From NCBI GenBank assembly GCA_964252035.1, contig OZ176201.1: 64,000 nt of DNA; one strand, given 5' to 3'. The translations under genes and the position numbers were made by a program. Positions 4,778 to 35,202 of this stretch are shown one piece after another. The stretch is from Podarcis erhardii. Its lineage: Eukaryota. Numbering within the stretch: the stretch's first letter is position 1; each line of letters begins with the position of its first letter. The notes beneath the pieces are model-generated. The model made no database searches, was not told where the DNA came from, and saw only the letters and a list, made by a program, of their open reading frames with translations.

Positions 4778-7027
4778 CATAGAATCATAGAATCATAGAG
4801 TTGGAAGAGACCACAAGGGCCATCGAGTCCAACCCCCTGCCAAGCAGGAAACACCATCAGAGCACTCCTGACATATGGTTGTCAAGCCTCTGCTTAAAGA
4901 CCTCCAAAGAAGGAGACTCCACCACACTCCTTGGCAGCAAATTCCACTGTCAAACAGCTCTTACTGTCAGGAAGTTCTTCCTAATGTTTAGGTGGAATCT
5001 TCTTTCTTGTAGTTTGGAACCATTGCTCCGTGTCCGCTTCTCTGGAGCAGCAGAAAACAACCTTTCTCCCTCCTCTATGTGACATCCTTTTATATATTTG
5101 AACATGGCTATCATATCACCCCTTAACCTCCTCTTCTCCAGGCTAAACATGCCCAGCTCCCTTAGCCGTTCCTCATAAGGCATCGTTTCCAGGCCTTTGA
5201 CCATTTTGGTTCCAGTTTGTCAGTGTTCTTCTTGAACTGTGGTGCCCAGAACTGGACACAGTACTCCAGGTGAGGTCTGACCAGAGCAGAATACAGTGGC
5301 ACTATTACTTCCCTTGATCTAGATGCTATATTCCTATTGATGCAGCCCAGAATTGCATTGGCTTTTTTAGCTGCCGCGTCACACTGTTGGCTCATGTCAT
5401 GTTTGTGGTCAACCAAGACTCCTAGATCCTTTTCACATGTACTGCTCTCAAGCCAGGTGTCACCCATCTTGTATTTGTGCCTCTCATTTTTTTTGCCCAA
5501 GTGCAATACTTTACATTTCTCCCTGTTAAAATTCATCTTGTTTGTTCTGACCCAGTTCTCTAATCTGTCAAGGTCATTTTGAAGTGTGATCCTGTCCTCT
5601 GGGGTGTTAGCCACCCCTCCCAGTTTGGTGTCATCTGCAAATTTGATCAGGATGCCCTTGAGTCCATCATCCAAGTCGTTGATAAAGATGTTGAATAAGA
5701 CCGGGTCCAAGACAGAACCCTGTGGCACCCCACTAGTCACTCTTCTCCAGGATGAAGAGGAACCATTGAAGAGCACCCTTTGGGTTCGGTCAGTCAGCCA
5801 GTTACAAATCCACTGAGTGGTAGCATAGTCAAGTCCGCATTTTACCAGCTTCTTTACAAGAATATCATGGGGCACCTTGTCAAATGCCTTGCTGAAATCA
5901 AGGTAGGCTACATCCACTGCGTTCCCTTCATCTACCAGGCTTGTAATTCTGTCAAAAAACGAGATCAGGTTAGTCTGACATGACTTATTTTTCAGAAATC
6001 CATGCTGACTATTGGTGATCACAGTATTCCTTTCTAGGTGCTCACAGACTGTTTGCTTAATGATCTGCTCCAGAATCTTCCCTGGTATTGATGTCAGACT
6101 GACTGGGCGGTAATTATTTGGGTCCTCTCTTTTCCCCTTTTTGAAAATAGGGACAACATTTGCCCTCCTCCAGTCTACCGGGATTTCGCCTGTTCTCCAG
6201 GAATTCTCAAAGATGACTGCCAGTGGCTCTGAGATCACATCTGCTAGTTCTTTTAATACTCTTGGATGCAGTTCATCTGGCCCTGGAGACTTGAATACAT
6301 CTAAACTAGCCAAGTATTCTTGTACTATCTCCTTAGTTATTCTTTGCTGTGTTTCCTCTGCTGAATCATTTGCTCCAAATTCTTCAGGTCGGGCATTGTT
6401 TTCTTTATCGGAGAAGACTGAAGCAAAGAAGGCATTGAGGAGTTCAGCCCTTTCTGTGTCCCCTGTTTGCATTTCACCATCTTCTCCTCTGAGTGACCCC
6501 ACTGTTTCTTTGTTCTTCCTTTTGCTACGAACATACCCATAAAAGCCTTTTTTGTTGCTTTTAACCTCTCTAGCAAGCCTGAGTTCATTCTGTGCTTTAG
6601 CTTTTCTGACTTTGTGTCTACACGTGCTGACTATTTGTTTGAATTCCTCTTTGGTGGTTTCCCCCCTTTTCCATTTTTTGTACACATCCCTTTTTAATGT
6701 TAACTCAGTTAAAAGTTCTTTAGATAGCCACCCTGGCTTCTTTAGGCACCTTCCATGTTTCCGTCTCATTGGTATTGCCTGAAGTTGTGCTTTTACTATC
6801 TCCCTCTTAACAAACTCCCAGCCATCATGAACTCCCTTTCCTTTTAGTATTACTGTCCATGGGATCTCACCCAGCACTTCCCTAAGTTTTATGAAGTCGG
6901 CTTTCTTAAAGTCAAGAAATTGAGTCCTAGTATGCTTGGCTGCTCCTTTCCGCTGTATAGTAAACTTCAGAAGAGCATGATCGCTCGCGCCTAATGATCC
7001 TTCCACTTCTACCCCACTAACCAGGTC
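4778..7027 (-). mobile_element. Young 5'-truncated CR1 LINE (~2.25 kb)
   Basis: (ATTCTATG)n tail at 4778-4799 on the minus strand, CR1 3' UTR, ORF2 with endonuclease C-terminus and complete RT; 3' 370 bp nearly identical to 51029-51401. Confidence 0.95.
4950..7027 (-). pseudogene. CR1 ORF2 remnant (APE endonuclease end plus reverse transcriptase), frameshifted by a ~20 bp deletion near 5210
   Basis: Motifs DLVSGVEVEGSLGASDH, YRPVSLTS, YLDFSKAFD, GVPQGSVL, KFADD, RPHLEYCVQFW, continuing as [18 protein letters not shown] in ORF 4950-5204; the expected RVQRRAT peptide is missing at the frame switch. Confidence 0.92.
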
Positions 7028-23870: not shown

Positions 23871-24544
23871 GAGGCATCCCAGCTCTCCGAGAGAGATTAT
23901 TTGGTCCGACAGATGGAAGCAGAAAGAAAGTGGGTACTGTATGTCACAGTACACTGTATTCCACGTTTCTCTTCCCTTTGTTCTTGTGCTGTTGTTATAG
24001 TTCAATACCTCACACAAAGGAATATGGATTGTCTGTGCTCGCCTTGGTTTTCCAGGCAAAGGGGGAGAAAAACAGATACAAGCCCCCCCCCATTGGTTTA
24101 ATAGACCAGCTATAAAAGAGGAAGCATGAAGAAAAAGGAGCGCAGCCATCATAAATAGATTAGCCATCAGTGGGCAACACCGCACAGCCTGCCTACAGCC
24201 TTGTTTTGCTTGCCCTTCAGTGACCGCCATGCTGAGCCCCCTAATGTCCCTTTCCTCGCTCCTCTTGTAAGCGCTGTGCAACCCTTTGTCTTGAGCTGTG
24301 TAGTACCGGTGCAACTCTGCTTAATGTGCTGATGCAGCAGAAAACAGACCAGGATGTGGCTGCTGCATCTTTTACTAAAGACCATCATGGACAAGGCATG
24401 CGTTGGTATGCATGTCTCCACCTTGCCTTTAATGGTGCACATGGAACATTGCATGTGGGGGGCAATCTTTTCATAAAGCCACTTCCGGGCCTGCCCCAGG
24501 AGGTGGGGTTGCGGGCCTCACGGGAGTCTCCCCCGATATAAGGT

Positions 24545-24720
24545 TAACCCTTCCCTGTGTCTCCAGCAAATGGGCTGGAGCCGGATAGTTGTTAGGATCA
24601 ATGCCTATGCCAATGCCTCTCATTCCTGAATTCAATAAAGTTGTGGCCTAATTCGCCCAATTAACCTTACATTACAGTGTCTTGTGTCTTTATTTATCCT
24701 GGTGGGGGGCGGGAACTCGC
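24545..24720 (+). mobile_element. 3'-terminal fragment of a related Ngaro/DIRS-type element
   Basis: Co-linear with the minus-strand 3' end of the large element: ggatag..caatgcct..aataaagttgtggcc (15 bp identical, 24634-24648 vs 26066-26080)..aacctta..tggggggc. Confidence 0.65.
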
Positions 24721-26431
24721 CATGCAAACTGCTTCTCATCCTGGGCCTGAAATGCCCTATTAAAAATTTATCAGCATTGTCTCAGTGTGAGTTGTTTTTC
24801 TGAAATTCATAGGACCACCTAGCAGTGTGTTGAGGGCAGAGCTTTGTGGGCAGAGGTCCAGGGCCCCCCATTCAACAGCTTGATCAGGAAGATCCACAAA
24901 TGCAGCAGGTTTTGTTTACCACATTTTGAAGAAAGTGAAATAATATACTTTCTCATTTAAAGTGGGGAGAGGTTGAAACATTTAAGTCAAAAATTGCCTT
25001 ACTTCACTATGATAACACGTGGCATGTCGCTATTTTGTAGTGTCCACTATCATGCTTTCTGGATAGCAAAACAATAGGTATAAAAATTGGGTTGATGGTA
25101 CACATTCAATAATTGCATGAGGGGGTAGCAGTGGCAATACATAATGCACTAGTGAGAAGGGGGACTTAAACACATCCAACAACACACATATAAGGGTCTT
25201 CTACTCCACTGGGAACTCTGATTTCCTAGTGTTCCTGATTTTCTGTAGGAATATTTCATATGCATGGCTGTACATATATATGGCTCCTTTCTCAATAACA
25301 CCACTGGGGAACAGTTAGTAGGTACATTGGCCCCACCACACATTCACTGAACATTTGAACGGGTTTGTGTGAACACCCTTTGCTGTTTATGCATGTAGGA
25401 ACAGAATCAACACATGGATCAGTCTGGAATTTAAATCTCTAACATCCAAATACAGGCAACCTGGTCCTCTTCTCTTGGCACCAGCAGATATGCCTGCTCA
25501 AAGCCTACTAGCCAAATAAAGAGGCTGCTCTCAGATGAGTTTATTGCTCCAAAACAATGTGCAACAGAGACACTCAAGGACATGTATCATGGGTGCAGGA
25601 TAGCCTTTCCTGACAGTGATGCAATGAATACCAAGGCGCATGTGTAAAACCGGCAGCTGAGCAAAGCTAATAAGTATAATAGGACATGGTAGAAACCCTT
25701 TATTGGATTTGTGTGTACTTTGCATCGATCCCTGCTGTGAGCCAGCCTGTTCATAGTTTCAATAAAGACTAATTGGTTAATGCTGATAAGTATTCTATTT
25801 TAGGCCCATCTCCTAAGTACTGTTTGGCAGCTTTAGACCTATGGGAAGCAGTAGCTGTGAAAACCAGTGACTTCAGTGCATGTGCGCTCATTATTTAGAT
25901 GGCCACTTCACACATTCTGAGAAGCAACAAAGAGCAGATGAGGAGATGCACTTTTCACACGTCTGGGATATTAATATTGTTTGCGTGTTGAGTCCCACAG
26001 TGCCCCCCATCAAAAATTCACACATCACACATAAATTTTTGTTTAAGGTTTTTTGGCATAATTTTGGCCACAACTTTATTCAAATACAAAAATGTGAGTG
26101 GTTGCTTAGGCATTGGTTATGACTATCTATCCTTGCCCTCAAGGACAGAGCTGGCCCTTCTGGACACCAACGGAAGCCAGTGTGGGAAACAAGTATTGGG
26201 TGAGAAAATGAGGCCGGGGAACAGTCCGTCACCTCTCACCCTCATGTTCCGGTGGGGCTTGCACGGCCCAAGTCCGACTCCGGGGACAAGGACGAAATGA
26301 ATGGCAAGCCCCTGGATTCCTTTAACGGAATTCCCTTCGCATCATTTGGAGGGATAGGCACTTACCCCTCCAAGCACCAATTTAACCAATGCCCAACCGC
26401 CAATGGAGCCCTCAGCTCACCGCCAAACCAC

Positions 26432-27006
26432 TCACAAACCCAACCAAGACCTCAGCTTGGTTACCACCGCACCAATCCAAGCCTCATTCCCTGAAGCGGA
26501 AAGGTGCATGCCATCGTCCCTAAAAAAGGATGGCCTCTGAAAAAGAATCTCAGGGTGGGAAATCACATCACCTCCAAGCTCCAAAACCTTCTTGCCCACA
26601 GCAGCATTGATGCGTCTTTTGGCTCTTTCGGTAGCGGCCGGGCAGCGACTGCCCCTCCAGATGCAGCGTGGCAAAAGGCTTGACCAAAAGATCTTCGCTG
26701 TGGGCACCATTGCCCGCAGCGTCTCCAGGTCACCCAAAATTGCAACACGTAATGACAAACAGCCCATAGTCACCACATCATTCTCGCCCAGCTGTACCAC
26801 AATAGCAGCTGGCGGCCCCTCCAGGAGCAACTGCCTACGGATACTAGGCAAGAACTCTGACCAACGCATTCCTCGTCTGGAGAGCCAAGACAATCACACG
26901 TGTGGAGGAAGGCCGAGATCTGGACCCCATCCGGATTGCCGTGCTGCGACACTGGCCCAATGGACGATACTGTGCCCCACCATCCAAATGCGGACCACCG
27001 CTAAAC
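26432..27006 (-). pseudogene. SGNH/GDSL-type hydrolase ORF of the element, with one in-frame TGA at 26894-26896
   Basis: Reading through the stop: VRIWMVGHSIVHWA (block I Ser), RRGMRW (II), QLGEND (III), DDGMHLS (V). Confidence 0.85.
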
Positions 27007-27047
27007 CTAATGAAAATGTAAAACAAAAGGAGTGTAAGGCACCAAAG

Positions 27048-27987
27048 TCAGCGAACATAACCTCTGAACGCATTTGATTTCCAGCGACCCAAATCCTTTA
27101 TCCTGGCGGCTGACAAGCCCCAATGGGCAGCTGTTGTGGCCGCCCCTATCCTAAAAGAATGGGGGGCAAAATCTTGGGCTGTGCCGCCACAAGCCATAAT
27201 CGCCTTACGCATCACCTTTGCAAACTGATGTCTTGACAGGGGCAAACCATTCTCATGCCTTAGCAACGGCCCCTCCCCTGGGGTGCGTACCGCCAGGTAT
27301 TTAGTAAGATCCTTCACGGGGCAGGGGCCTGCTTCCCCCGTGGCCGGGAGACGAATGAGGGCCCCCTTACCCCTCTGATCCGTCTTAGAATGTCGAATCG
27401 TGATACGCAATTCCATAGGGGATAGCTGCACATCCTGAATGAGGAGGCCTCTAAAATTGCCATCTCTGTAGACCTCCACGACCAATTCACCCACTCTTAA
27501 TGCTCCAAAAAAATGCAATAGAAAAGGCCACCGTAAAAAGGCGAGCCTCATATCGCGACCAACACACCACCCGCAACTTGTTGCACATCTTGCTCAATAA
27601 ATCAAATGAAATGGGATGCCTATTTTTTGGCTGGGTTGGACAAATCCTACTCCATCCTTCTATGGCTTTGCGAACAACAAACTTCGCACAAGGATCTTTA
27701 TCGTAAAATGTTTTACAGAAAAATGCTATAGCAGCTGCCTGTACCCTAATTGTCTTAGCTGCCTGTCCCAACTGAAATAAGTGCGCCAGGTATCTTAAAA
27801 CCTGCAAAGAAGAAGGTGGGACCCCCTTCAGCACATCAGCAGATTGCCGCATAAAAGCCAAAAAATCATCCCAGGCTTTCAAATACGATCTCATGGTAGA
27901 AGGGGAAACTGAAGCCGCTACTCCCTGAAAAACTAATTGCTGCCAAGGTTCCAGAGATGATCCGGGAAATATTCCGGACGTATCCAC
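27048..27987 (-). pseudogene. Tyrosine recombinase (N-terminal SAM-like domain plus catalytic domain), split by +1 in an A7 run at 27507-27513
   Basis: ALRVGEL, HSKTDQ, HSFRIGAAT, GRWKS, GYVR (R-K-HxxR-W-Y intact); removing one base gives AFSIAFFGALRVGEL. Confidence 0.93.
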
Positions 27988-29942
27988 GCCTCTGGAACCA
28001 GAAGTCTGAACCGCTCCATCTGAAAACGGGACAGAGCATCAGCAATCTCGTTAGACACCCCAGGAATAAAACGTGCCGAAAATACTATATTATAACGTAA
28101 ACAATGCAATACGAAGGACCGCAAGAGGGCCGACACCCTAGAGGAGCGTGACGACAATTTGGCCAGCACGGTCACCACTGCCTGGTTATCGGTCCAGAAG
28201 CAGACACGACGGTTCCTGAACTCCTCGACCCACAAATGCACTGCCACTGCAATGGGAAAAAACTCGAGAAAAGTTAGGTCCCGCGTAATCTCAGCTCCCT
28301 GCCACTCCCTCGGCCAACGCTGTGCACACCAACGGCCCTTCCAATAAAGGCCGAAGCCAAGGGAGCCTGCAGCATCTGACTGCACCTGGAAGTCGTTGTG
28401 CAAGTTCAACGTATCTTGCCACAACGACACCCCGTTGAATTCCTCTAGGAACTCCAGCCAGACGCCGAGATCACCCTTCACCCCATTAGAGAGGCGCACA
28501 CGATGATGAGGGGCCTTCAACCCTGCCGTGAGCCATGCCAAGTGCGAACAAAAGGGGCGCCCAGGAGCCACCACCCTGCACGCAAAGTTCAGGTGTCCCA
28601 AAAGCGATTGTAGCTGCCTAAGAGACACCTTTTTCAGAGGAAGAATTTCCTCTATTATCCCTTTGAGGGCCGCCAGCTTGTCACTTGGCAGGCTTGAAGT
28701 TTGAGAAACCGTATCCAAAAGGATACCCAGATATGTGAGCTGGGTAGACGGCCCTTCCGTCTTATCTGCGGCAAGCGGAACCCCTAGCTCCTGTGTAAGG
28801 TCAGCAAAGGCCTGCAACAGCACCGAGCAGTTGCCAGTGTCAAAAGCCGAGGCCCATAAAAAATCATCCAAATAATGCGTAACTCCGCCCAGTCCAGTCT
28901 TGGACTTGAGGGCCCATTCCAAAAAAGTGCTAAAGGATTTGAAAGCGGCACACGCGATTGAACAGCCCATAGGCATGGCTTTGTCAAAATAGTATTTGCC
29001 CTCAAACTGAAAACCTAAGAGCCAAAAATCATCGGGATGAATTGGCAAAAGGCGAAATGCCGATTCAACGTCACATTTTGCCAATAAAGCCGCATGGCCG
29101 AAGTGCCGAATCATCTTGATCGCCTGATCAAGAGAGGCGTATCGTACCGAGCACAGCTCTGGAGGAATAACATCATTGACCGATGTACCCCTGGGATGGG
29201 ACAAATTATGAATCAAACGAAATTCACCTGGGGCCTTCTTTGGCACGATACCCAAAGGGGAAACGTGCAAATTGGGAAATGGGGGAGTAGCAAACGGACC
29301 AGCCATGCGCTGCAAAGCCACTTCCTTCGCTATCTTCTTCCGAGCAACCAAAGGTAGCTCCCGAACTGATTTTTGGTTAGCTGGATTCCGTGCCACGGGT
29401 GGCGTGGCCACCGGAATCCGAAAACCAAAAGAAAAACCATCACTCAAATAACCCGCAGCCGCCCTATCAGGGTAAGACTGCAACCACCATTGAAGGGCCT
29501 GTAACTTAACAGGAGTATGGGCCATTGAAGTGAGTACACTATTTTCCTGTACCTGGAGCAGGCGTGGGAGGAGCTGACTTGGGGGGTTGCTGGGAACCCC
29601 CCCTTCCACCTCGAAAGGGCCGCCGACCGCCAAAACAAGAGGAGGCAGCATGCACACCATTGCACCTTTCACACCGGTGCGCGTACTTGCACCCTTGACG
29701 CTGACAGGACCCTTTATTGAAATCCCAGCAAAACAGGCGACGCCCAGGTTTAAAACCTCCTGAACTCGGCTTTGCCTGCTCCTGCGTCTTTTTGTCGATG
29801 AGCGGGGCCACGTAAGTGGTCCACACATCAAGATCTTTACGATCCCAACGGGCTGAGGGGATCTTGGCCGCGCGGCACCTGAAGTTCTCATCATATTTGA
29901 TCGCGGCCTTCTCACCAGCTTTGGTGAAGGCAGAGCGAACAA
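27933..29942 (-). CDS. Reverse transcriptase/RNase H of the YR retrotransposon (open frame; conserved part starts near ATG 29525)
   Basis: SPLGIVPKK, FRLIHNLS, DVESAFRLLP, PMGCS, YLDDF; RNase H SDAAG, FLEFFP, TDNQAV, ADALSR. Confidence 0.93.
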   Translation of the reverse strand: MFALPSPKLVRRPRSNMMRTSGAARPRSPQPVGIVKILMCGPLTWPRSSTKRRRSRQSRVQEVLNLGVACFAGISIKGPVSVKGASTRTGVKGAMVCMLPPLVLAVGGPFEVEGGVPSNPPSQLLPRLLQVQENSVLTSMAHTPVKLQALQWWLQSYPDRAAAGYLSDGFSFGFRIPVATPPVARNPANQKSVRELPLVARKKIAKEVALQRMAGPFATPPFPNLHVSPLGIVPKKAPGEFRLIHNLSHPRGTSVNDVIPPELCSVRYASLDQAIKMIRHFGHAALLAKCDVESAFRLLPIHPDDFWLLGFQFEGKYYFDKAMPMGCSIACAAFKSFSTFLEWALKSKTGLGGVTHYLDDFLWASAFDTGNCSVLLQAFADLTQELGVPLAADKTEGPSTQLTYLGILLDTVSQTSSLPSDKLAALKGIIEEILPLKKVSLRQLQSLLGHLNFACRVVAPGRPFCSHLAWLTAGLKAPHHRVRLSNGVKGDLGVWLEFLEEFNGVSLWQDTLNLHNDFQVQSDAAGSLGFGLYWKGRWCAQRWPREWQGAEITRDLTFLEFFPIAVAVHLWVEEFRNRRVCFWTDNQAVVTVLAKLSSRSSRVSALLRSFVLHCLRYNIVFSARFIPGVSNEIADALSRFQMERFRLLVPEAWIRPEYFPDHLWNLGSN

Positions 29943-31061
29943 TAGATAGATAAACGATCAAGTGGAGAGATCTCCGAGGATAAGCCGCCGTGACTACGCC
30001 AGCAAATACTTGGAAACCATCAAGCCAGTTTTCGAATGTCCTGTCTATGGAGAAAGAGGCAGAATGCTTCTTGGAAGAGTTCCCTTTCTCCTGATCCTCA
30101 GAAGGCGGGACAAGTTTAAACATGTCAACGTAACGACTGTTCAATATCCTGGACCGTAGTTTAGATGCCAAGTGCGTACCTGGAATGATGTCTCGAGCCG
30201 AATTAGTAGATACCTTGACATCAGGTACCAAGACACCATCCCTGCACTCCTGTACCGCACCATACTTAGCCCTGTGTGTGTTGGCCCTTCGTTCCCAAGC
30301 CCACCGTGGGAGCCCAGAGGCCGTTTCTCCAAAGCCCCAGTAAAGTTCATTCGAATTACCTGACTCATCGTCAGAATCCGAAGACGACGTACCTGTATAT
30401 GAAGAAGAAGTATCGTCCCTCCTTCGCTTTGCGCGCTTCCAGGAAGACCTCCTGCGGCGACGCTTCCCGCCTGAGGACCTCTTGGCAGGAACAGGTAAGC
30501 TGTCCTCAATAGAAGACTCAGAGTCAGGATTCGGCAGAACCACAGCTGGAGCTGATGGAGAAGAAACGACACGTGAGGGCCAGGAACCGACACAACCTCA
30601 TCAGGAGGTTGGGCAATCCTGCCCCGGCGGTTGGAAGATATCGAGGGGTTCCCCCTCGCCAAGGTCCTTCTCGACGCAAGGCTTGACCTCCGCAAGCGGC
30701 CACGAGCGACAGGTAAGTAATGGGGCTGGGCTGCCTGTGACTCAACTCCCACACCCCCAGCCAATAACCCTTCTCTCTCATTTTCGCTAGATGCGGATGA
30801 CACTGGGGAAGATGCCCCCACTGGATGAAAACGGCTTGCAGACGTGGAAGGCTGACTGGCGCATTGCTGAAGAAAGCTGTCCAGATCCTCAGCGAAACGA
30901 GACAAGGCTGCTGGATCACCGGCCATGCTTGCCACCAAGGATTGAACCCGCCCCAGCGGCTGGCTTGGGGTTGGTGAACGCAGCGCCTGTGATGGACCTC
31001 TAATAGGCCGCTTTGCAGTGGTTGAAGAGGCAGGACGAGCTGCGACTTTCTTTGGAGCCAT
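29539..31061 (-). pseudogene. Gag-like ORF1 with C-terminal zinc finger, frameshifted near 30540-30597
   Basis: ATG 31061 (MAPKK) frame joins ORF 29539-30543; C-x7-C-x4-C-x3-H plus C-x2-C-x3-H-x4-C (CWDFNKGSCQRQGCKYAHRCERCNGVHAASSC). Confidence 0.85.
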
Positions 31062-31811
31062 ACCTGCTAGTTCAAAACAAATGAAAAGTCAATAAAATTC
31101 CACCAATCAAACCAGAAATATAAAACACCAAAGGAATTAACAATGTCTGGCACACGCCTTTTTCCAAAGCACCACTAATATTCCAACTAGCAGACTGACG
31201 CAGAACCAAATTAAATCAGAATGCGTCAAACAAAACAAACTAAAAAACAAAACCACTTCGGTTGGGATCAAGGAGCAAATCAAATTCAATTAAATGATTC
31301 CCTTCCTGTTGTAGAATCAAAGCCCCCCCCCCTCAGGCCGGGGGCGGTGGATGCAGACAATGCAAGCCCAAGGGCTCAGATAGTACCCACCAGTAAACAG
31401 ATTAAGGCGCTAGAAAAGAAAATTAAACTATGAATTAATAACGCGTGCACCACTAGATCACCACCCTGAAAGCCTTAAATTAAAGGAAACTGCAATGCGT
31501 GGGCACAGAGGGAGATGTACACTAAATAAGGCCCTGGGCAGGACTCACCAGCGAGCCGCAGTAACCACTAGTGAACACAAGAGGGCCAGCTAGAACCAGA
31601 AAGCAAAATTGCTGATCCAAAATGGCGGCCAATGAATCAGCACCTCCTATGCTGACTAACACAGGCCGCGACAAGGCCTCAAAGGCCTACTGAGGCCTCG
31701 ATTACGTTGGCGAGGCTGGTGGGAAACGCCGTTGCCCCGCCAACAATCCTAGGAGCCGGGCGAAACGATGCGCCCCCCCGCGCTCCCCCGCGCTCCCCTC
31801 CCCACCCACCA

Positions 31812-32043
31812 GGTGCTCCACGGGGCGGGAGGAGCCGCAACGACCCCCAGATGCTGGGCCGCGAACGCGCCCAGCGGAGCCGGAAGGCGAAAGGGCCCCG
31901 GCGCGCCTCGCGCCTATAGGCTGCGGTGCTCTACGGGGCGGGAGGAGCAGCAACGATCCTCAGATGCTGGGCCGCGAACGCGCCCAGTGGAGCCGGAAGG
32001 CGAAAGGGGCCCCGGCGCGCCTCGCGCCTATAGGCCGCGGTGC
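31812..32043. repeat. Two-copy 113/114-bp GC-rich tandem duplication in the element leader
   Basis: Units 31812-31924 and 31925-32038, then a partial ggtgc; few substitutions. Confidence 0.95.
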
Positions 32044-32559
32044 GACAAGAAAGAGGATCGGCCCGCTCCCGGCCCAAGCAAACCGCCGCCGCTCGCGCCC
32101 CGCAAGGAAACCAGGGCCCACTCTGCTGCCGGACCCGGCCCAAGGGAGCAGGTAGGGTAGGGGAGGAGACCCGGCAGCTCCGCAGCTGCGGAGCCGCGAT
32201 TAAAACCGTGCAAGAGGGGAGATGGGGGGGCCGCGCCCACGCGGCGCGATGTCGCAAGGTTGCTCCCAGGCCTCCCCCGGGCTGGGGAGGGGGGGGCCGC
32301 CGACAGCCCCTTAGCTACTGCCGATTAAATTACCGAAGATAAATGAAACAGTTTGGGAATAGGGAAAAGAAAGGGGGGGTGGAACCGAAGAAAATGAAAG
32401 AAAGGGGGGGTAACAGAAGCTAGGTAATAAAAAAGGGGGTAGGAAAAGATGATTAAATCAGAAGAATTGAGAATATAGCCAGCAATACAACCGTCTCCAG
32501 GCACAGCTGTTCCTTGATCCGGTCCAAAATGGCCAAGAGAACGTCCCACGTCTGTCCCT

Positions 32560-32594
32560 AGTATTTAAATACTCTGACCCCTCCTCCAAATTGG
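32560..32594 (-). promoter_or_regulatory. Putative element promoter (palindromic TATA-like box with upstream CCAAT)
   Basis: 14-bp palindrome AGTATTTAAATACT at 32560-32573; CCAAT on the minus strand at 32590-32594; position upstream of the leader. Confidence 0.45.
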
Positions 32595-35202
32595 CAACAA
32601 TCAAGTTCCCCCAGCAACCCAATTTAACCATTTAACTGCTTGGGTACTCCATCCAAAATTTGCCTAGTCACTCCAGGGTGGCCTGTTTTTCCCAACCGCA
32701 ACACGTGTTCTCTGCTATGGAGAACACGCTTTATACTGCAACTTCAATATATATGGTGTTTTACTAAGTCTTTTTTGTTGGAAAAAAGGGAACTTCTTTT
32801 CCCCAAAGATATTATAATCTGAAAATGACTGAGAGTGCAGGGGACAGAAGGAGTGCAGGTTTCGGATTAATAGGGAATTTGTGTGGACAGTGTCATTACG
32901 TTGTTTAGTCAGCTAGATGGGACTGGACTTGGCTGTATCTAGATGGAAACAGGAGTACCCTGATAGAGAGAGATTAGCTCTGTACCTGTATTAACTCTTG
33001 CACAGGGCATAAAAGAACAATAGAAGCCAATTCAGATACCTGTACCTAACAGTTGTAGGCTTAAAACCAAGCTAGCCCATTTTGAGGCCTACTTAGAAAT
33101 AAGTCCCACTGACTCACATAAGAGGAGAGATTCACAAAGATTAAACACTAGTACACTACCCCTTAAGTGTGTTATGTTTGCTTCATGCTGCGGCTTTTCA
33201 GGTTATGAATGTGGCAAACCCAGGAGTGTTTACTTCGCGCATGCACAGAAGCGCTCTATCGCGCACACACAGTAGTGGCACTCTACTTACGGACTTTTGG
33301 GGTGCGAACAGCACTCCAAAATGCATCATGTTCGAAAGTAGAGGTACCACTGTATAATTCTTTTCTGTGAACATAGTCATACATTCCAAACAAGCATCGT
33401 TTTCTGTGTGTGATAATGTTGGTACTGTGGCTGTAAACACTCCATATGATTGAAAGCCTATTTAAAACACGCGACTGCCACCAGAGAATCCTAGTGTAAG
33501 CCTCCCCCCAAAAGGAATTGTAGTTTACCCCTCACAGAGCTACAATTCCTAATGCTCTTCTCAAACTACAGTTCCCAGAATGCTTGTGGAGAAGTTATGG
33601 GCTTTAAATGCATGCTGTGTACACAACTTGTGGTTTTTACCAACACAGATTCACAATCAAACCATTATCTTGCCCAACATCCCACACCTCCCTTCTTACA
33701 GCCCCCATCTCTTCAATTTGTGGCCACCCTTTCACACTTTTTCTCTTGGGGCCCGTATTTGTGTTCTGTAAATAAAGCAATTGTAGGAATGCTGGGATTT
33801 CCCCCACCCCTCTAAGCACACATTTTGTTTTGATAAACTACAGTGTTTTGTCTGCAGAAAAGTATTAACCGCTTACATCTATTTTCTCAAAGACCATGCA
33901 TGAATATTAAAAGGGATTTATTCCTACAGTGGCTTCGGGCAGTTGAGTAATCCATTATATGCTGTCATATCACACTGTGGTAATGTGAAAAGCTGGGAGT
34001 CCCTCCAGTAATCTTGATTAGCAATATGGGGACCATTTTTATTTTTTATTTTTTTTTAGCTGTAAACACATTTTCCTCCCCAGTGTGCTGAGTTCACATT
34101 AAAAATTATGATGTGGCTCTTAATCCATTGTTTTGTTTTAATTACAATAATGGTAACAATAATTGTTATTTCTTTTTTAAGATAATAATTGCTAATAAGT
34201 GCATTTCCTGCTGCTAAAAGATGCCAAGTTACATTTAATCAATTAATGAATTAATTTTGGTGAGTAATATGAGCCTCTCCTAGGCTCATGTATATTTCAG
34301 TCCTATACAAACCCATGTAAAACTTTCCTTCTTAATCCATGTTAACAATTAACACATTTCCAGACAATCAAGCATCAAAGCAGAGCAGAAGCTTGGCATG
34401 CCACCCACAATTTCCAGCCACAGTAAGGCGATTCAACCCACACTGAGGAGTGAAATTTCAGCCCTTGTTCCCGGTAAAAAGGGTTGCTCGTGTTCTGGCT
34501 GGAATCTCTATAGTCCCCCTTTTTTGTTCAACGGATCCCAAAGGCTGATTTGCCTTTTAACAGGTACAGGTCCAGGTCCAGGGTGGGTGGGGGAAGAAAC
34601 CACCAACAGATGAAACACCGCCCCCCACTCAAGTAAGATGCAGTTATAGAGAAAAGAAGTTTCACACACTGATTTCCTTTGCTAGTTATGAAAAATGCAC
34701 TTGGGACATTTTCTTCTCTCTACAGAGTTAAGATGCAGTCAATAGCTACACACTCATGACATCATATTGCAGAGAAGGAAGACATTGTGTGAACTGTGAA
34801 AGTGAAAAATGGTCATAGATAATTTTATATCCACAGAAAATGGTCCTAAATTACATGTAAATAAAGAAAATAATATTACTTGATGTTGTCAGAATTTTCA
34901 TATGAAGAAGTCTTAGCAAGTCTCTCAGCACTCCCCTTGAGCAGGATGATGGCAATCCCTGCAGCGCAAACTTTTAAGATGTCAAAAGAACGCTACAGAA
35001 ACTTTTTATTAATGCAACTATTCATCAGGAGTTATTGATTTTTGTTTTGCTTTGTAAAGTTTTCCCCACAGTATTATTATTAAAACGTTCTAGCTGCAGA
35101 TTGCATTTTTGTCTAGTTATTGATCCTTGTATTATCTACTCTGAAGAGACCTTCATGTACTTTGATAGATGGAAGGGAAAAGCTGATTATGTTTCCTTAC
35201 AG

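What the first reader, a model, noticed from the sequence alone, without database searches (positions are those of the whole stretch)
25983..32729. Near-complete Ngaro-like retrotransposon with a catalytically complete SGNH hydrolase
Seen: gag with zinc finger, RT (YLDD), RNase H (D-E-D-D), YR (R-K-HxxR-W-Y) and a fourth ORF retaining all SGNH blocks (GHS, G, GEND, DGMH); no methyltransferase. Known: DIRS1-type elements carry a methyltransferase, while a hydrolase has been reported in some vertebrate Ngaro elements, with no established function. Inference: retained catalytic residues imply selection on esterase activity in this lineage, possibly for lipid or membrane association of the RNP.
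Basis: partly seen in the sequence, partly recalled or inferred. Interest (0 to 1): 0.7.

Follow-up and report, generated by a model that had tools for sequence, protein, structure and literature searches.

The report
Dead Ngaro retrotransposon carrying an esterase
This is a broken copy of a known kind of jumping gene (a Ngaro retrotransposon) in a lizard-type genome; its extra esterase gene is real and is kept by selection in sister copies, where it appears to be made as a spliced fusion to the front part of the element's Gag protein.

Summary
The element is real. It lies on the minus strand at 32732..25980 and reads gag (CCCH finger), RT/RNase H, tyrosine recombinase, then an SGNH hydrolase, with no methyltransferase.

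This copy is dead:
- gag has a frameshift.
- The recombinase has a frameshift.
- The hydrolase has an in-frame TGA (26896-26894) between blocks I and II.
- The copy lacks the 3' A2-spacer-B2 repeat unit.

Sister copies in Podarcis muralis carry the Ngaro split direct repeats and four intact ORFs.

The hydrolase evolves under purifying selection. Pairwise dN/dS has a median of 0.17, against 0.09 for RT and 0.12 for the recombinase. Its catalytic residues are near-invariant from lizards to molluscs.

Ngaro elements with an SGNH ORF were already described, so this is a new member of a known kind.

One thing I did not find in the held papers. The hydrolase is preceded in all 12 copies by a conserved branch point, pyrimidine tract and AG. 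A conserved donor lies in gag. Of 22 NCBI gene models from four lacertid species, 18 join about 222 N-terminal Gag residues to the hydrolase across a 3.4-kb intron.

The closest solved relative by sequence is weak: the esterase of a zebrafish LINE ORF1 protein.

The scan noted a fossil Ngaro-type element elsewhere in this genome (s1-229686).

The parts
25980..32732 (-). Whole element copy in the form A1 - internal region - B1. The A2-spacer-B2 unit of full copies is absent.
   Evidence: blastn against sister copies L001-L006. No internal direct or inverted terminal repeat is found in the window.
32515..32732 (-). A repeat (A1), the 5' end of the element. It starts AAAGCGTG and holds a TATA-like TATTTAAATA.
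   Evidence: It matches both A1 and A2 of L002, L003, L004 and L001 at 75-83% identity. A1 equals A2 at 100% in L002 and L003.
31812..32043 (-). 113-114-nt tandem duplication inside the GC-rich 5' leader.
   Evidence: the repeat finder D1/D2 and blastn give 93-95% identity. GC is 0.61-0.65.
29539..31061 (-). gag. ATG at 31061. It has a variable N-part with a predicted helical hairpin and an Arg-rich motif, then a conserved core with a CCCH finger and a CCHC-like knuckle. It is frameshifted between 30579 and 30531.
   Evidence: ORFs; tblastn against intact 506-564-aa gag ORFs of L003-L006; alignment A3; zf-CCCH hits.
30386..30398 (-). Conserved 5' splice site in gag, phase 1. The exon ends at 30393 and GT is at 30392-30391 (acag|GTACGT).
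   Evidence: The GT is conserved in all seven copies that carry gag (five, plus L012 and L013). G|GTNCGT is kept while the encoded residue changes T/A/S. This is the exon 1 end of the NCBI models P0012 and P0014.
27933..29942 (-). RT/RNase H ORF, 669 aa, uninterrupted.
   Evidence: PF00078, E 3.5e-11. PDB relatives are foamy virus and Ty3 RT. 80% identical over 664 aa to the L003 RT.
27048..27987 (-). Tyrosine recombinase: a SAM-like N-domain and a catalytic domain in two frames, so frameshifted within 27551-27487.
   Evidence: PF13495 and PF02899 on the N-part, PF00589 on the C-part. Intact 329-aa ORFs occur in L003-L006. 39% identity to the recombinase part of a Haliotis protein.
27007..27040 (-). 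3' splice site: branch-point-like CTTAC (27038-27034), a pyrimidine tract without AG, and AG at 27008-27007. The exon starts at 27006, phase 1.
   Evidence: Conserved in all 12 copies at a fixed 24 nt before the W-M-V-G-H-S codons, while the sequence upstream carries indels. The models P0012, P0014 and P0004 use it.
26432..27006 (-). SGNH hydrolase exon with blocks I, II, III and V present. It is interrupted by TGA at 26896-26894. The stop codon is at 26434-26432.
   Evidence: Translation; PF13472; 75-84% identity to P. muralis proteins; the AF2 model of relative P0007 has pLDDT 84 and matches SGNH hydrolases by Foldseek at probability 1.0.
25980..26403 (-). B repeat (B1), the 3' end of the element. 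It holds AATAAA at 26080-26075 and a fully conserved GGG|GTAAGT at 26365.
   Evidence: 89-92% identical to both B1 and B2 of the sister copies. Jukes-Cantor distance is 0.094 against a synonymous distance of about 0.83.

Best explanation
Window 32732..25980 (minus strand) is a dead, 3'-shortened copy of a Ngaro-type tyrosine-recombinase retrotransposon family. The family is abundant, and apparently recently active, in lacertid lizards.

Shown:
- The family encodes gag, RT/RNase H, a tyrosine recombinase and an SGNH esterase.
- It has no methyltransferase.
- It is bounded by split direct repeats (A1 ... B1-A2-spacer-B2).
- The esterase is a constrained part of the element (dN/dS about 0.17).

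Inferred (about 0.7): the esterase is not translated as a free fourth ORF. A subgenomic mRNA removes a roughly 3.39-kb intron holding the gag core, RT/RNase H and the recombinase. It joins the first ~222 codons of gag in frame to the esterase exon, giving a ~413-aa protein. The retained gag part is predicted as a disordered N-terminus, a helical hairpin and an Arg-rich motif. In the window the donor is 30393|30392 and the acceptor 27007|27006. This copy could not make the protein because of the gag frameshift and the TGA.

Inferred by analogy (about 0.4): the fusion is an accessory Gag-related protein that brings a lipid- or membrane-directed esterase to the element's particle or RNP. This resembles the esterase-type ORF1 proteins of CR1/L2 LINEs.

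The missing A2-spacer-B2 unit is best explained by recombination between B1 and B2, the counterpart of solo-LTR formation.
For: Architecture and domains.

Family termini:
- L002 has A 212 nt and B 417 nt, each pair 100% identical, with a 182-nt spacer.
- L001, L003 and L004 have the same layout.
- The spacer is conserved at 89-91% and is unique.

Activity: L003-L006 have all four ORFs open, and L003 and L004 are near-identical copies at two loci.

Selection:
- Hydrolase omega has median 0.17 (0.12-0.27) over 45 pairs among the 10 distinct copies (64 pairs when the two duplicate copies are included).
- There are no indels over 187 codons.
- For comparison, RT/RNase H is 0.09, the recombinase 0.12, the gag core 0.08 and the gag N-part 0.31.
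- Catalytic Gly/Ser, Gly, Gly-x-Asn-Asp and Asp-Gly-x-His are invariant or at least 90% conserved in 30 relatives of 31-61% identity.

Splicing:
- The branch point, pyrimidine tract and YAG|G are conserved in 12 of 12 copies at a fixed distance from block I.
- There is no conserved start codon. The upstream ATGs are by-products of the recombinase's Tyr-Val codons, the frame is closed in L001, L006 and L011, and the Met next to block I is Leu or Ile in five copies.
- The donor G|GTNCGT is conserved across amino-acid changes and sits at the boundary between the variable gag N-part and the conserved core.
- Donor and acceptor are both phase 1.
- NCBI models XP_077785642.1 (P. muralis) and XP_060135029.1 (Zootoca) map to exactly these sites, with introns of 3386 and 3387 nt. 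The window's is 3386 nt.
- 18 of 22 lacertid models (P. muralis, P. raffonei, P. lilfordi, Zootoca) share the junction.
- In the AF2 model of the fusion the first strand of the SGNH fold starts 4 residues after the junction.

LINE link:
- The only PDB sequence hit below E 0.1 is 4c1b, the ZfL2-1 ORF1p esterase (E 0.044).
- It aligns block II Gly, block III Asn and the 'transposon-specific' Ser228 position.
- It has the highest identity (21%) among the top Foldseek hits.
- That esterase hydrolyses pNP-acetate and binds anionic liposomes (PMC3905857).
Against: - No RNA data were visible here. The gene models are automated, and I could not see whether RNA-seq supports them.
- Some models use other donors: one inside the recombinase (P0004, P0027), and one slightly downstream in gag (P0184).
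- Eight of 10 distinct copies do have an in-frame ATG upstream of the hydrolase.
- In mollusc and Xenopus models the hydrolase follows the recombinase in one protein, so the expression route may differ between lineages.
- The copies were found through intact annotated proteins, which biases dN/dS downwards. Distant pairs are saturated at synonymous sites.
- The LINE-esterase similarity is marginal, and His191 of ZfL2-1 is Gln here.
- RT and recombinase were not placed on a tree with reference Ngaro, DIRS1, PAT and VIPER sequences.
Confidence: 0.75

Rival explanations
1. The hydrolase is a free-standing fourth ORF. It would be translated from its own ATG, which overlaps the end of the recombinase ORF. 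Published consensus annotations of Ngaro elements draw it this way.
For: - Eight of 10 distinct copies, the window included, have an in-frame ATG 20-35 codons upstream of block I.
- The Xenopus paper describes four overlapping ORFs.
- Several database proteins of 201-213 aa are called this way.
Against: - The ATGs fall inside the conserved recombinase C-terminal Tyr-Val and Asn-Ala codons, so they are kept for another reason.
- The frame from them is closed in L001, L006 and L011.
- The stretch between them and block I has indels and no residue conservation. At DNA level it reads as branch point plus pyrimidine tract plus AG.
- AF2 gives this stretch pLDDT below 50.
- A fourth cistron on a 6-kb eukaryotic mRNA has no obvious route to translation.
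Confidence: 0.2
2. The hydrolase is a neutral passenger or a decaying relic. Its intact-looking motifs in this copy would be chance survival.
For: - The window copy itself is broken by a TGA.
- The function is unproven in the literature.
- Bdelloid retrotransposon GDSL ORFs showed no departure from neutrality within genomes.
Against: - dN/dS is 0.12-0.27 in all 45 pairs among the 10 distinct copies, at synonymous distances of 0.4-2.
- No indel occurs in 187 codons.
- Catalytic residues are conserved out to molluscs.
- The hydrolase is present in every copy.
Confidence: 0.03
3. The Gag-N-terminus-hydrolase genes annotated as LOC loci are domesticated host genes. The window copy would be a pseudogene of such a gene family rather than a transposon product.
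For: - NCBI annotates them as ordinary protein-coding loci in four lacertid species.
- They are under purifying selection.
Against: - Each examined locus lies inside a repeat-bounded element, with RT and recombinase ORFs in the 'intron'.
- There are many loci per genome and many subfamilies.
- Near-identical copies occur at two loci, with 100% identical terminal repeats.
Confidence: 0.03
4. The element belongs to another tyrosine-recombinase group (DIRS1-like or PAT-like) that has lost its methyltransferase. It would not be a Ngaro element.
For: RT and recombinase were not placed on a reference tree here. PAT-like elements also have split direct repeats.
Against: - There is no room for a methyltransferase between RNase H and the recombinase.
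- There are no inverted terminal repeats or internal complementary region.
- In the papers held here, the hydrolase ORF after the recombinase is described only for Ngaro.
- Homologous recombinase-plus-hydrolase proteins exist in Xenopus tropicalis, where the paper reports the SGNH domain only in the Ngaro-like families.
Confidence: 0.05

Closest known systems
Ngaro retrotransposons with a hydrolase ORF (Goodwin and Poulter 2004, as cited in PMC9210276; Xenopus DIRS-53_XT and DIRS-54_XT)
   Same: - The order gag, RT/RNase H, tyrosine recombinase, then an SGNH hydrolase.
- No methyltransferase.
- Split direct repeats A1 ... B1-A2-B2 in complete copies.
- No target-site duplication visible.
   Different: - The host is a lacertid-type lizard. 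The papers held here mention the hydrolase for amphibians and 'some Ngaro'.
- A conserved ~180-nt spacer lies between A2 and B2.
- Many copies, this one included, have the shortened A-internal-B form.
- The hydrolase appears to be expressed as a spliced Gag-N-terminus fusion. I did not find this in the held papers, and the two primary Ngaro papers are not held.
Esterase-type ORF1 proteins of CR1/L2/RTEX LINEs (ZfL2-1 ORF1p, PDB 4c1b; PMC3905857)
   Same: - A small SGNH esterase carried by a retroelement.
- It is the best and only sub-0.1 PDB sequence hit.
- Block II Gly, block III Asn and the Ser228 position align.
- In both, the esterase sits C-terminal to a helical, basic, non-enzymatic part of the element's structural protein.
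   Different: - Identity is only about 21%, E 0.044.
- His191 is Gln here.
- Block I is G-H-S here.
- The N-terminal partner is a piece of a Gag with zinc fingers joined by splicing. It is not a coiled-coil ORF1.
- Common descent is not shown.
Spliced subgenomic mRNAs of retroviruses whose product starts with gag codons (for example the avian leukosis virus env mRNA; from my own knowledge)
   Same: One genomic transcript gives a second, spliced mRNA. That mRNA borrows the gag start codon and skips pol-type genes to express a 3' accessory gene.
   Different: - About 222 gag codons are retained rather than a few.
- The product is an esterase, not an envelope glycoprotein.
- There is no signal peptide or transmembrane segment.
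GDSL esterase ORF3 of bdelloid Vesta LTR retrotransposons and Athena elements (PMC5408684)
   Same: An SGNH/GDSL esterase with intact catalytic residues, placed as an extra 3' ORF of a retroelement.
   Different: - A different element class.
- That paper reports independent capture.
- Those ORFs showed no departure from neutrality within genomes.

Membership tests
Ngaro (tyrosine-recombinase retrotransposons) | Encodes RT/RNase H and a tyrosine recombinase in the order gag - RT/RNase H - recombinase. | tested here: met
   PF00078, E 3.5e-11. PF00589, E 3.9e-6, plus SAM-like N-domain hits. The ORF order is seen on the minus strand.
Ngaro (tyrosine-recombinase retrotransposons) | Split direct repeats: A1 at the 5' end and B1-A2-B2 at the 3' end. 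| tested here: met
   Met for the family: L001-L004 have A1=A2 and B1=B2, 100% identical in L002. Not met by the window copy itself, which has only A1 and B1.
Ngaro (tyrosine-recombinase retrotransposons) | No methyltransferase domain. | tested here: met
   The RT/RNase H ORF ends at 27933 and the recombinase ORF starts at 27987. No methyltransferase family appears in the Pfam scans.
Ngaro (tyrosine-recombinase retrotransposons) | RT and recombinase cluster with reference Ngaro sequences in a phylogeny. | not testable with these tools
   No Repbase or Dfam reference sequences could be brought in by reference. There is only indirect support: homologous recombinase-plus-hydrolase proteins in Xenopus tropicalis and molluscs.
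Ngaro subgroup with hydrolase ORF | An SGNH hydrolase coding region downstream of the recombinase. | tested here: met
   It is present at the same place in the window and in all sister copies.
SGNH/GDSL hydrolase superfamily | Blocks I (Ser), II (Gly), III (Asn) and V (Asp-x-x-His) within the SGNH fold. | tested here: met
   The motifs are present in the window and conserved in 30 relatives. The AF2 model of the relative has pLDDT 84. Foldseek probability is 1.0 to TesA, PAF-AH and sialate O-acetylesterase. The Pfam score of 25.7 is below the cut-off of 32.9.
SGNH/GDSL hydrolase superfamily | An uninterrupted coding sequence in this copy, so that it could be an enzyme. | tested here: not met
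   In-frame TGA at 26896-26894.
SGNH/GDSL hydrolase superfamily | Hydrolytic activity. | not testable with these tools
The literature states the function is unproven.
DIRS1-like elements | Inverted terminal repeats with an internal complementary region, and a methyltransferase domain. | tested here: not met
   No inverted repeats at the ends and no methyltransferase.
Transposon-encoded esterases of LINE ORF1p type (ZfL2-1) | The transposon-specific His191 and Ser228 pair, plus sequence relatedness. | tested here: inconclusive
   The Ser228 position is conserved. His191 is replaced by an invariant Gln. E is 0.044.

The most novel reading that the evidence does not exclude
The long-unexplained Ngaro 'fourth ORF' is really the 3' exon of a conserved spliced subgenomic mRNA. 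Its product fuses the N-terminal ~220 residues of Gag (helical hairpin plus Arg-rich motif) to an SGNH esterase. A tyrosine-recombinase retrotransposon would then make a second, Gag-related accessory protein with the same layout as the esterase-type ORF1 proteins of CR1/L2 LINEs. That could be by shared descent of the esterase module or by convergence. It would point to a common lipid or membrane step in the life cycles of unrelated retroelements.
Probability: 0.55. Interest if true: 0.6.

Novelty: new member of a known kind. Interest (0 to 1): 0.42.

Why it matters
Ngaro elements with an SGNH hydrolase have been described since 2004, and this copy is dead.

The follow-up gives three useful things:
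- Quantitative evidence that the hydrolase is as much a constrained part of the element as its recombinase.
- A concrete, testable definition of the protein that is probably made. That is a ~413-aa Gag-N-terminus-esterase fusion, for which naturally intact genes exist in Podarcis and Zootoca. The literature calls the hydrolase's function 'not proven', and this turns that into an assayable question.
- An explanation for why this copy's ends looked wrong: it has the shortened A-internal-B form.

The weak link to the LINE ORF1 esterase suggests that the membrane and lipid hypothesis raised for LINEs can be tested in a second, unrelated class of retroelement.

Tried and rejected
1. Terminal repeats inside the window. 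The repeat finder and two blastn self-comparisons, down to word size 7, found only the 113-nt leader duplication. The repeats became visible only through sister copies.

2. It is in phase in this copy, but the GT is absent in L003-L006. Rejected.

3. Signal-peptide reading of the hydrophobic stretch before block I. Rejected. The hydrophobicity comes from a T-rich pyrimidine tract, the stretch is not conserved as protein, its frame is closed in three copies, and AF2 confidence is below 50.

4. Donors in RT (29228|29227) and in the recombinase K-box. They are in phase but not conserved in all copies.

5. Search for a LINE-type esterase in the window and the fetched loci with a family profile. 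Only Ngaro hydrolases were found.

6. The repeat fragment at 24542-24727 shares only 21 nt with B. It is unrelated.

7. The primary Ngaro papers (Mol Biol Evol 2004; Microbiol Spectrum 2015) are not held. I therefore cannot exclude that splicing of the hydrolase was discussed there. Full-text searches for Ngaro with esterase, splicing or SGNH found nothing relevant.

8. The joined (spliced) window protein was not built or searched.

9. No complex prediction was run, because no binding claim rests on it.

10. No contig that looked human was met.

Full report
**What is there**

The finding lies on the minus strand. Reading 5' to 3' on that strand:
- 31061 to 29539: gag, in two frames.
- 29942 to 27933: a 669-aa ORF.
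- 27987 to 27048: two overlapping ORFs.
- 26893 to 26432: a 153-aa ORF.

Pfam results:
- RVT_1 on the 669-aa ORF, E 3.5e-11.
- Phage_integrase, E 3.9e-6, on the C-terminal recombinase piece.
- SAM-like N-domain hits on the N-terminal recombinase piece.
- A ZAP-like CCCH finger in gag.
- Lipase_GDSL_2, E 1.9e-5 (25.7 bits, below the 32.9 cut-off), on the last ORF.

The RT matches foamy-virus and Ty3 RT among solved structures. The RNase H motifs can be read in the sequence, but Pfam gives only a sub-threshold hit. No methyltransferase is present. The recombinase ORF begins inside the end of the RT/RNase H ORF.

**State of this copy**

The hydrolase frame extended upstream shows block I (G-H-S, 26977-26969). 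An in-frame TGA follows at 26896-26894, and then blocks II, III (G-E-N-D) and V (D-G-M-H). All relatives have Arg or Gln at the TGA position.

gag changes frame between 30579 and 30531, and the recombinase changes frame within 27551-27487. 'Near-complete' is therefore fair, but 'catalytically complete' is not. The motifs survive, but the reading frame does not.

**Relatives and termini**

The hydrolase piece finds proteins of Podarcis muralis at 75-84% identity, and unnamed contigs at 59-63%. I fetched the loci.

L003, L004, L005 and L006 carry the same four genes in the same order, all open: gag 506-564 aa, RT/RNase H about 600-650 aa, recombinase 329 aa, hydrolase about 200-220 aa. L003 and L004 are near-identical copies at two places on one chromosome.

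blastn showed what the window alone could not. The first 218 nt of the element (A, 32732-32515) and the last 424 nt (B, 26403-25980) recur in L001-L004 as A1 ... B1-A2-spacer-B2.
- In L002, A1 equals A2 (212 nt) and B1 equals B2 (417 nt) at 100%.
- In L003, A1 equals A2 at 100%.

This is the Ngaro split-direct-repeat layout (PMC9210276), with a conserved and unique spacer of about 180 nt between A2 and B2.

The window copy, L005 and L006 stop at the end of B1. They are A-internal-B forms. Recombination between B1 and B2 would produce exactly this, as solo LTRs arise. This is an inference. It explains why a reader saw termini that fit no known pattern (s1-220719).

**Is the hydrolase kept by selection?**

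Over 187 codons, 10 distinct copies align without a single indel. Median pairwise dN/dS values:

| Region | Median dN/dS |
|---|---|
| Hydrolase | 0.17 (range 0.12-0.27) |
| RT/RNase H | 0.09 |
| Recombinase | 0.12 |
| gag core | 0.08 |
| gag N-part | 0.31 |

Caveats: the copies were found through intact annotated proteins, the pairs are not independent, and distant pairs are saturated at synonymous sites.

A profile search of 1.84 billion cluster representatives found:
- 2025 representatives at E up to 0.001.
- 181 at E up to 1e-30.

Named members come from lacertids, geckos, a snake, newts, frogs and two molluscs. In 30 members of 31-61% identity the following are invariant or at least 90% conserved:
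- Block I Gly and Ser.
- Block II Gly.
- Gly-x-Asn-Asp.
- Asp-Gly-x-His.

In Haliotis, Mytilus and Xenopus models the hydrolase follows a recombinase homologous to the window's (39% and 35% identity). The recombinase-hydrolase pairing is therefore old. It is not a feature of this lineage.

**Fold and nearest solved relative**

AF2 on an intact relative (P0007) gives pLDDT 84. Foldseek matches TesA, PAF acetylhydrolase, sialate O-acetylesterases and other SGNH enzymes at probability 1.0.

By sequence, the only PDB hit below E 0.1 is 4c1b, at E 0.044. This is the esterase domain of the zebrafish ZfL2-1 LINE ORF1 protein. The alignment places block II Gly on Gly165, block III Asn on Asn195, and a conserved Ser on the 'transposon-specific' Ser228. 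His191 is Gln here.

That esterase is active on pNP-acetate and binds anionic liposomes (PMC3905857). The link is suggestive and no more.

**How the hydrolase is probably expressed**

The DNA just upstream of block I is conserved in an unusual way in all 12 copies. It reads as a CTTAC-type branch point, a pyrimidine tract free of AG, and YAG|G. The AG lies exactly 24 nt before the Trp-Met-Val-Gly-His-Ser codons. The stretch further upstream carries indels and varies in frame.

The upstream ATGs that ORF callers use fall within the recombinase's conserved C-terminal codons. The frame from them is closed in three copies. The Met beside block I is Leu or Ile in five copies. The exon therefore needs a start codon from elsewhere.

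A donor inside gag is conserved. In the window it is 30393|30392, acag|GTACGT. G|GTNCGT is kept in all seven gag-bearing copies while the encoded residue varies Thr/Ala/Ser. That points to a constraint on the RNA, not the protein.

The donor sits at the boundary between the variable gag N-part and the conserved core. Donor and acceptor are both phase 1.

The large search returned many proteins of about 370-500 aa with the hydrolase at the C-terminus.
- P0012 (XP_077785642.1, P. muralis), P0014 (XP_060135029.1, Zootoca) and P0011 (P. lilfordi) consist of the gag N-part, ending just after the Arg-rich motif, joined to the hydrolase.
- Mapping P0012 and P0014 to their loci puts the exon ends exactly on these two sites. 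The introns are 3386 and 3387 nt, and the window's would be 3386 nt.
- A further search lists more than a dozen such models in P. muralis (two annotation releases), P. raffonei and Zootoca. Of the 22 I inspected, 18 share the junction.
- AF2 of P0012 shows a disordered start, a helical hairpin (residues 32-67), a long disordered linker with the Arg-rich motif, and then the SGNH domain. Its first strand begins four residues after the junction.

I did not build or search the joined window protein. The exons were treated apart, by reference.

I could not see RNA evidence. A few models use other donors. I put the splicing reading at about 0.7.

**Comparison with what is known**

Ngaro elements lacking a methyltransferase and, in some hosts, carrying an SGNH hydrolase ORF 'with no proven function' are established (PMC9210276, PMC6681497, PMC7192593, PMC3266345). 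The finding is therefore a new member of a known kind.

GDSL esterases as extra ORFs are also known in bdelloid LTR elements, and as ORF1 in LINEs (PMC5408684, PMC3905857). I found no held paper that describes splicing of the Ngaro hydrolase to gag. The two primary Ngaro papers are not held.

The scan had already noted a fossil Ngaro-type recombinase-plus-hydrolase element on another piece of this genome (s1-229686).

**Verdict**

- It is a real, correctly placed, dead Ngaro copy.
- The hydrolase motifs are real, but the gene is broken here.
- Family-level selection on the hydrolase is supported.
- The class is already known.
- The likely Gag-N-terminus-esterase fusion is the one point worth following up.

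Noticed in passing
window 25980-26403; L005 9634-10053; L006 10175-10599: Three of seven copies (the window, L005, L006) have the shortened form A-internal-B. They lack A2, the ~180-nt spacer and B2. L005 and L006 still have all four ORFs open. Recombination between B1 and B2 would explain this, but an alternative integration product is not excluded.
   Followed up: partly
window 25980-26403 (B repeat), conserved GT at 26365: The non-coding B repeat is far more conserved between subfamilies (Jukes-Cantor 0.094) than synonymous sites (about 0.83) or the A repeat (0.23). It holds a perfectly conserved GGG|GTAAGT donor-like site and an AATAAA (26080-26075). Its role (recombination site, priming, splicing) is unknown.
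   Followed up: partly
L002 3631-10896: A non-autonomous derivative. Its A and B pairs are 100% identical, so it is young. It has an intact recombinase C-part and an intact hydrolase. gag and RT are replaced by an older, more divergent RT/recombinase fragment and a 22-nt satellite array (5062-5848).
   Followed up: partly
window 31541-31550 and 31061-31070: A strong donor-like site, CTG|GTGAGT (exon end 31549), lies in the 5' leader. A pyrimidine-rich tAGcAG acceptor ends two bases before the gag ATG (31061). This suggests a leader intron, as another reader noted (s1-220738). The leader is too diverged between copies to test by alignment.
   Followed up: no
window 32726-32732 and 25983-25989: The element's ends carry a short perfect inverted repeat: 5' AAA-GCGTGTT ... 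AACACGC-AA 3'. The B1-A2 junction of full copies shares the AA. No target-site duplication is visible. This may be the recombinase crossover core.
   Followed up: no
L001 100818-103617: A second, much more divergent Ngaro lineage lies just upstream of the younger hydrolase-B-A-B end. Its RT is 45-59% identical, and it has recombinase and hydrolase fragments. Several deep Ngaro lineages therefore co-exist in Podarcis, and all carry the hydrolase.
   Followed up: no
P0010 (XP_048364950.1, Sphaerodactylus townsendi, 3112 aa): A gecko gene model holds six separate matches to the hydrolase profile. This may be a model that chains several element copies, or a tandem array.
   Followed up: no
P0058 (Haliotis), P0053 (Mytilus): In the mollusc gene models the recombinase runs into the hydrolase within one protein, and block I reads G-S-S instead of G-H-S. 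The expression route of the hydrolase may differ between animal groups.
   Followed up: no
window 31812-32043: Two 113-114-nt tandem units (93-95% identical) in a 61-65% GC leader segment. This segment did not align to the sister copies.
   Followed up: no
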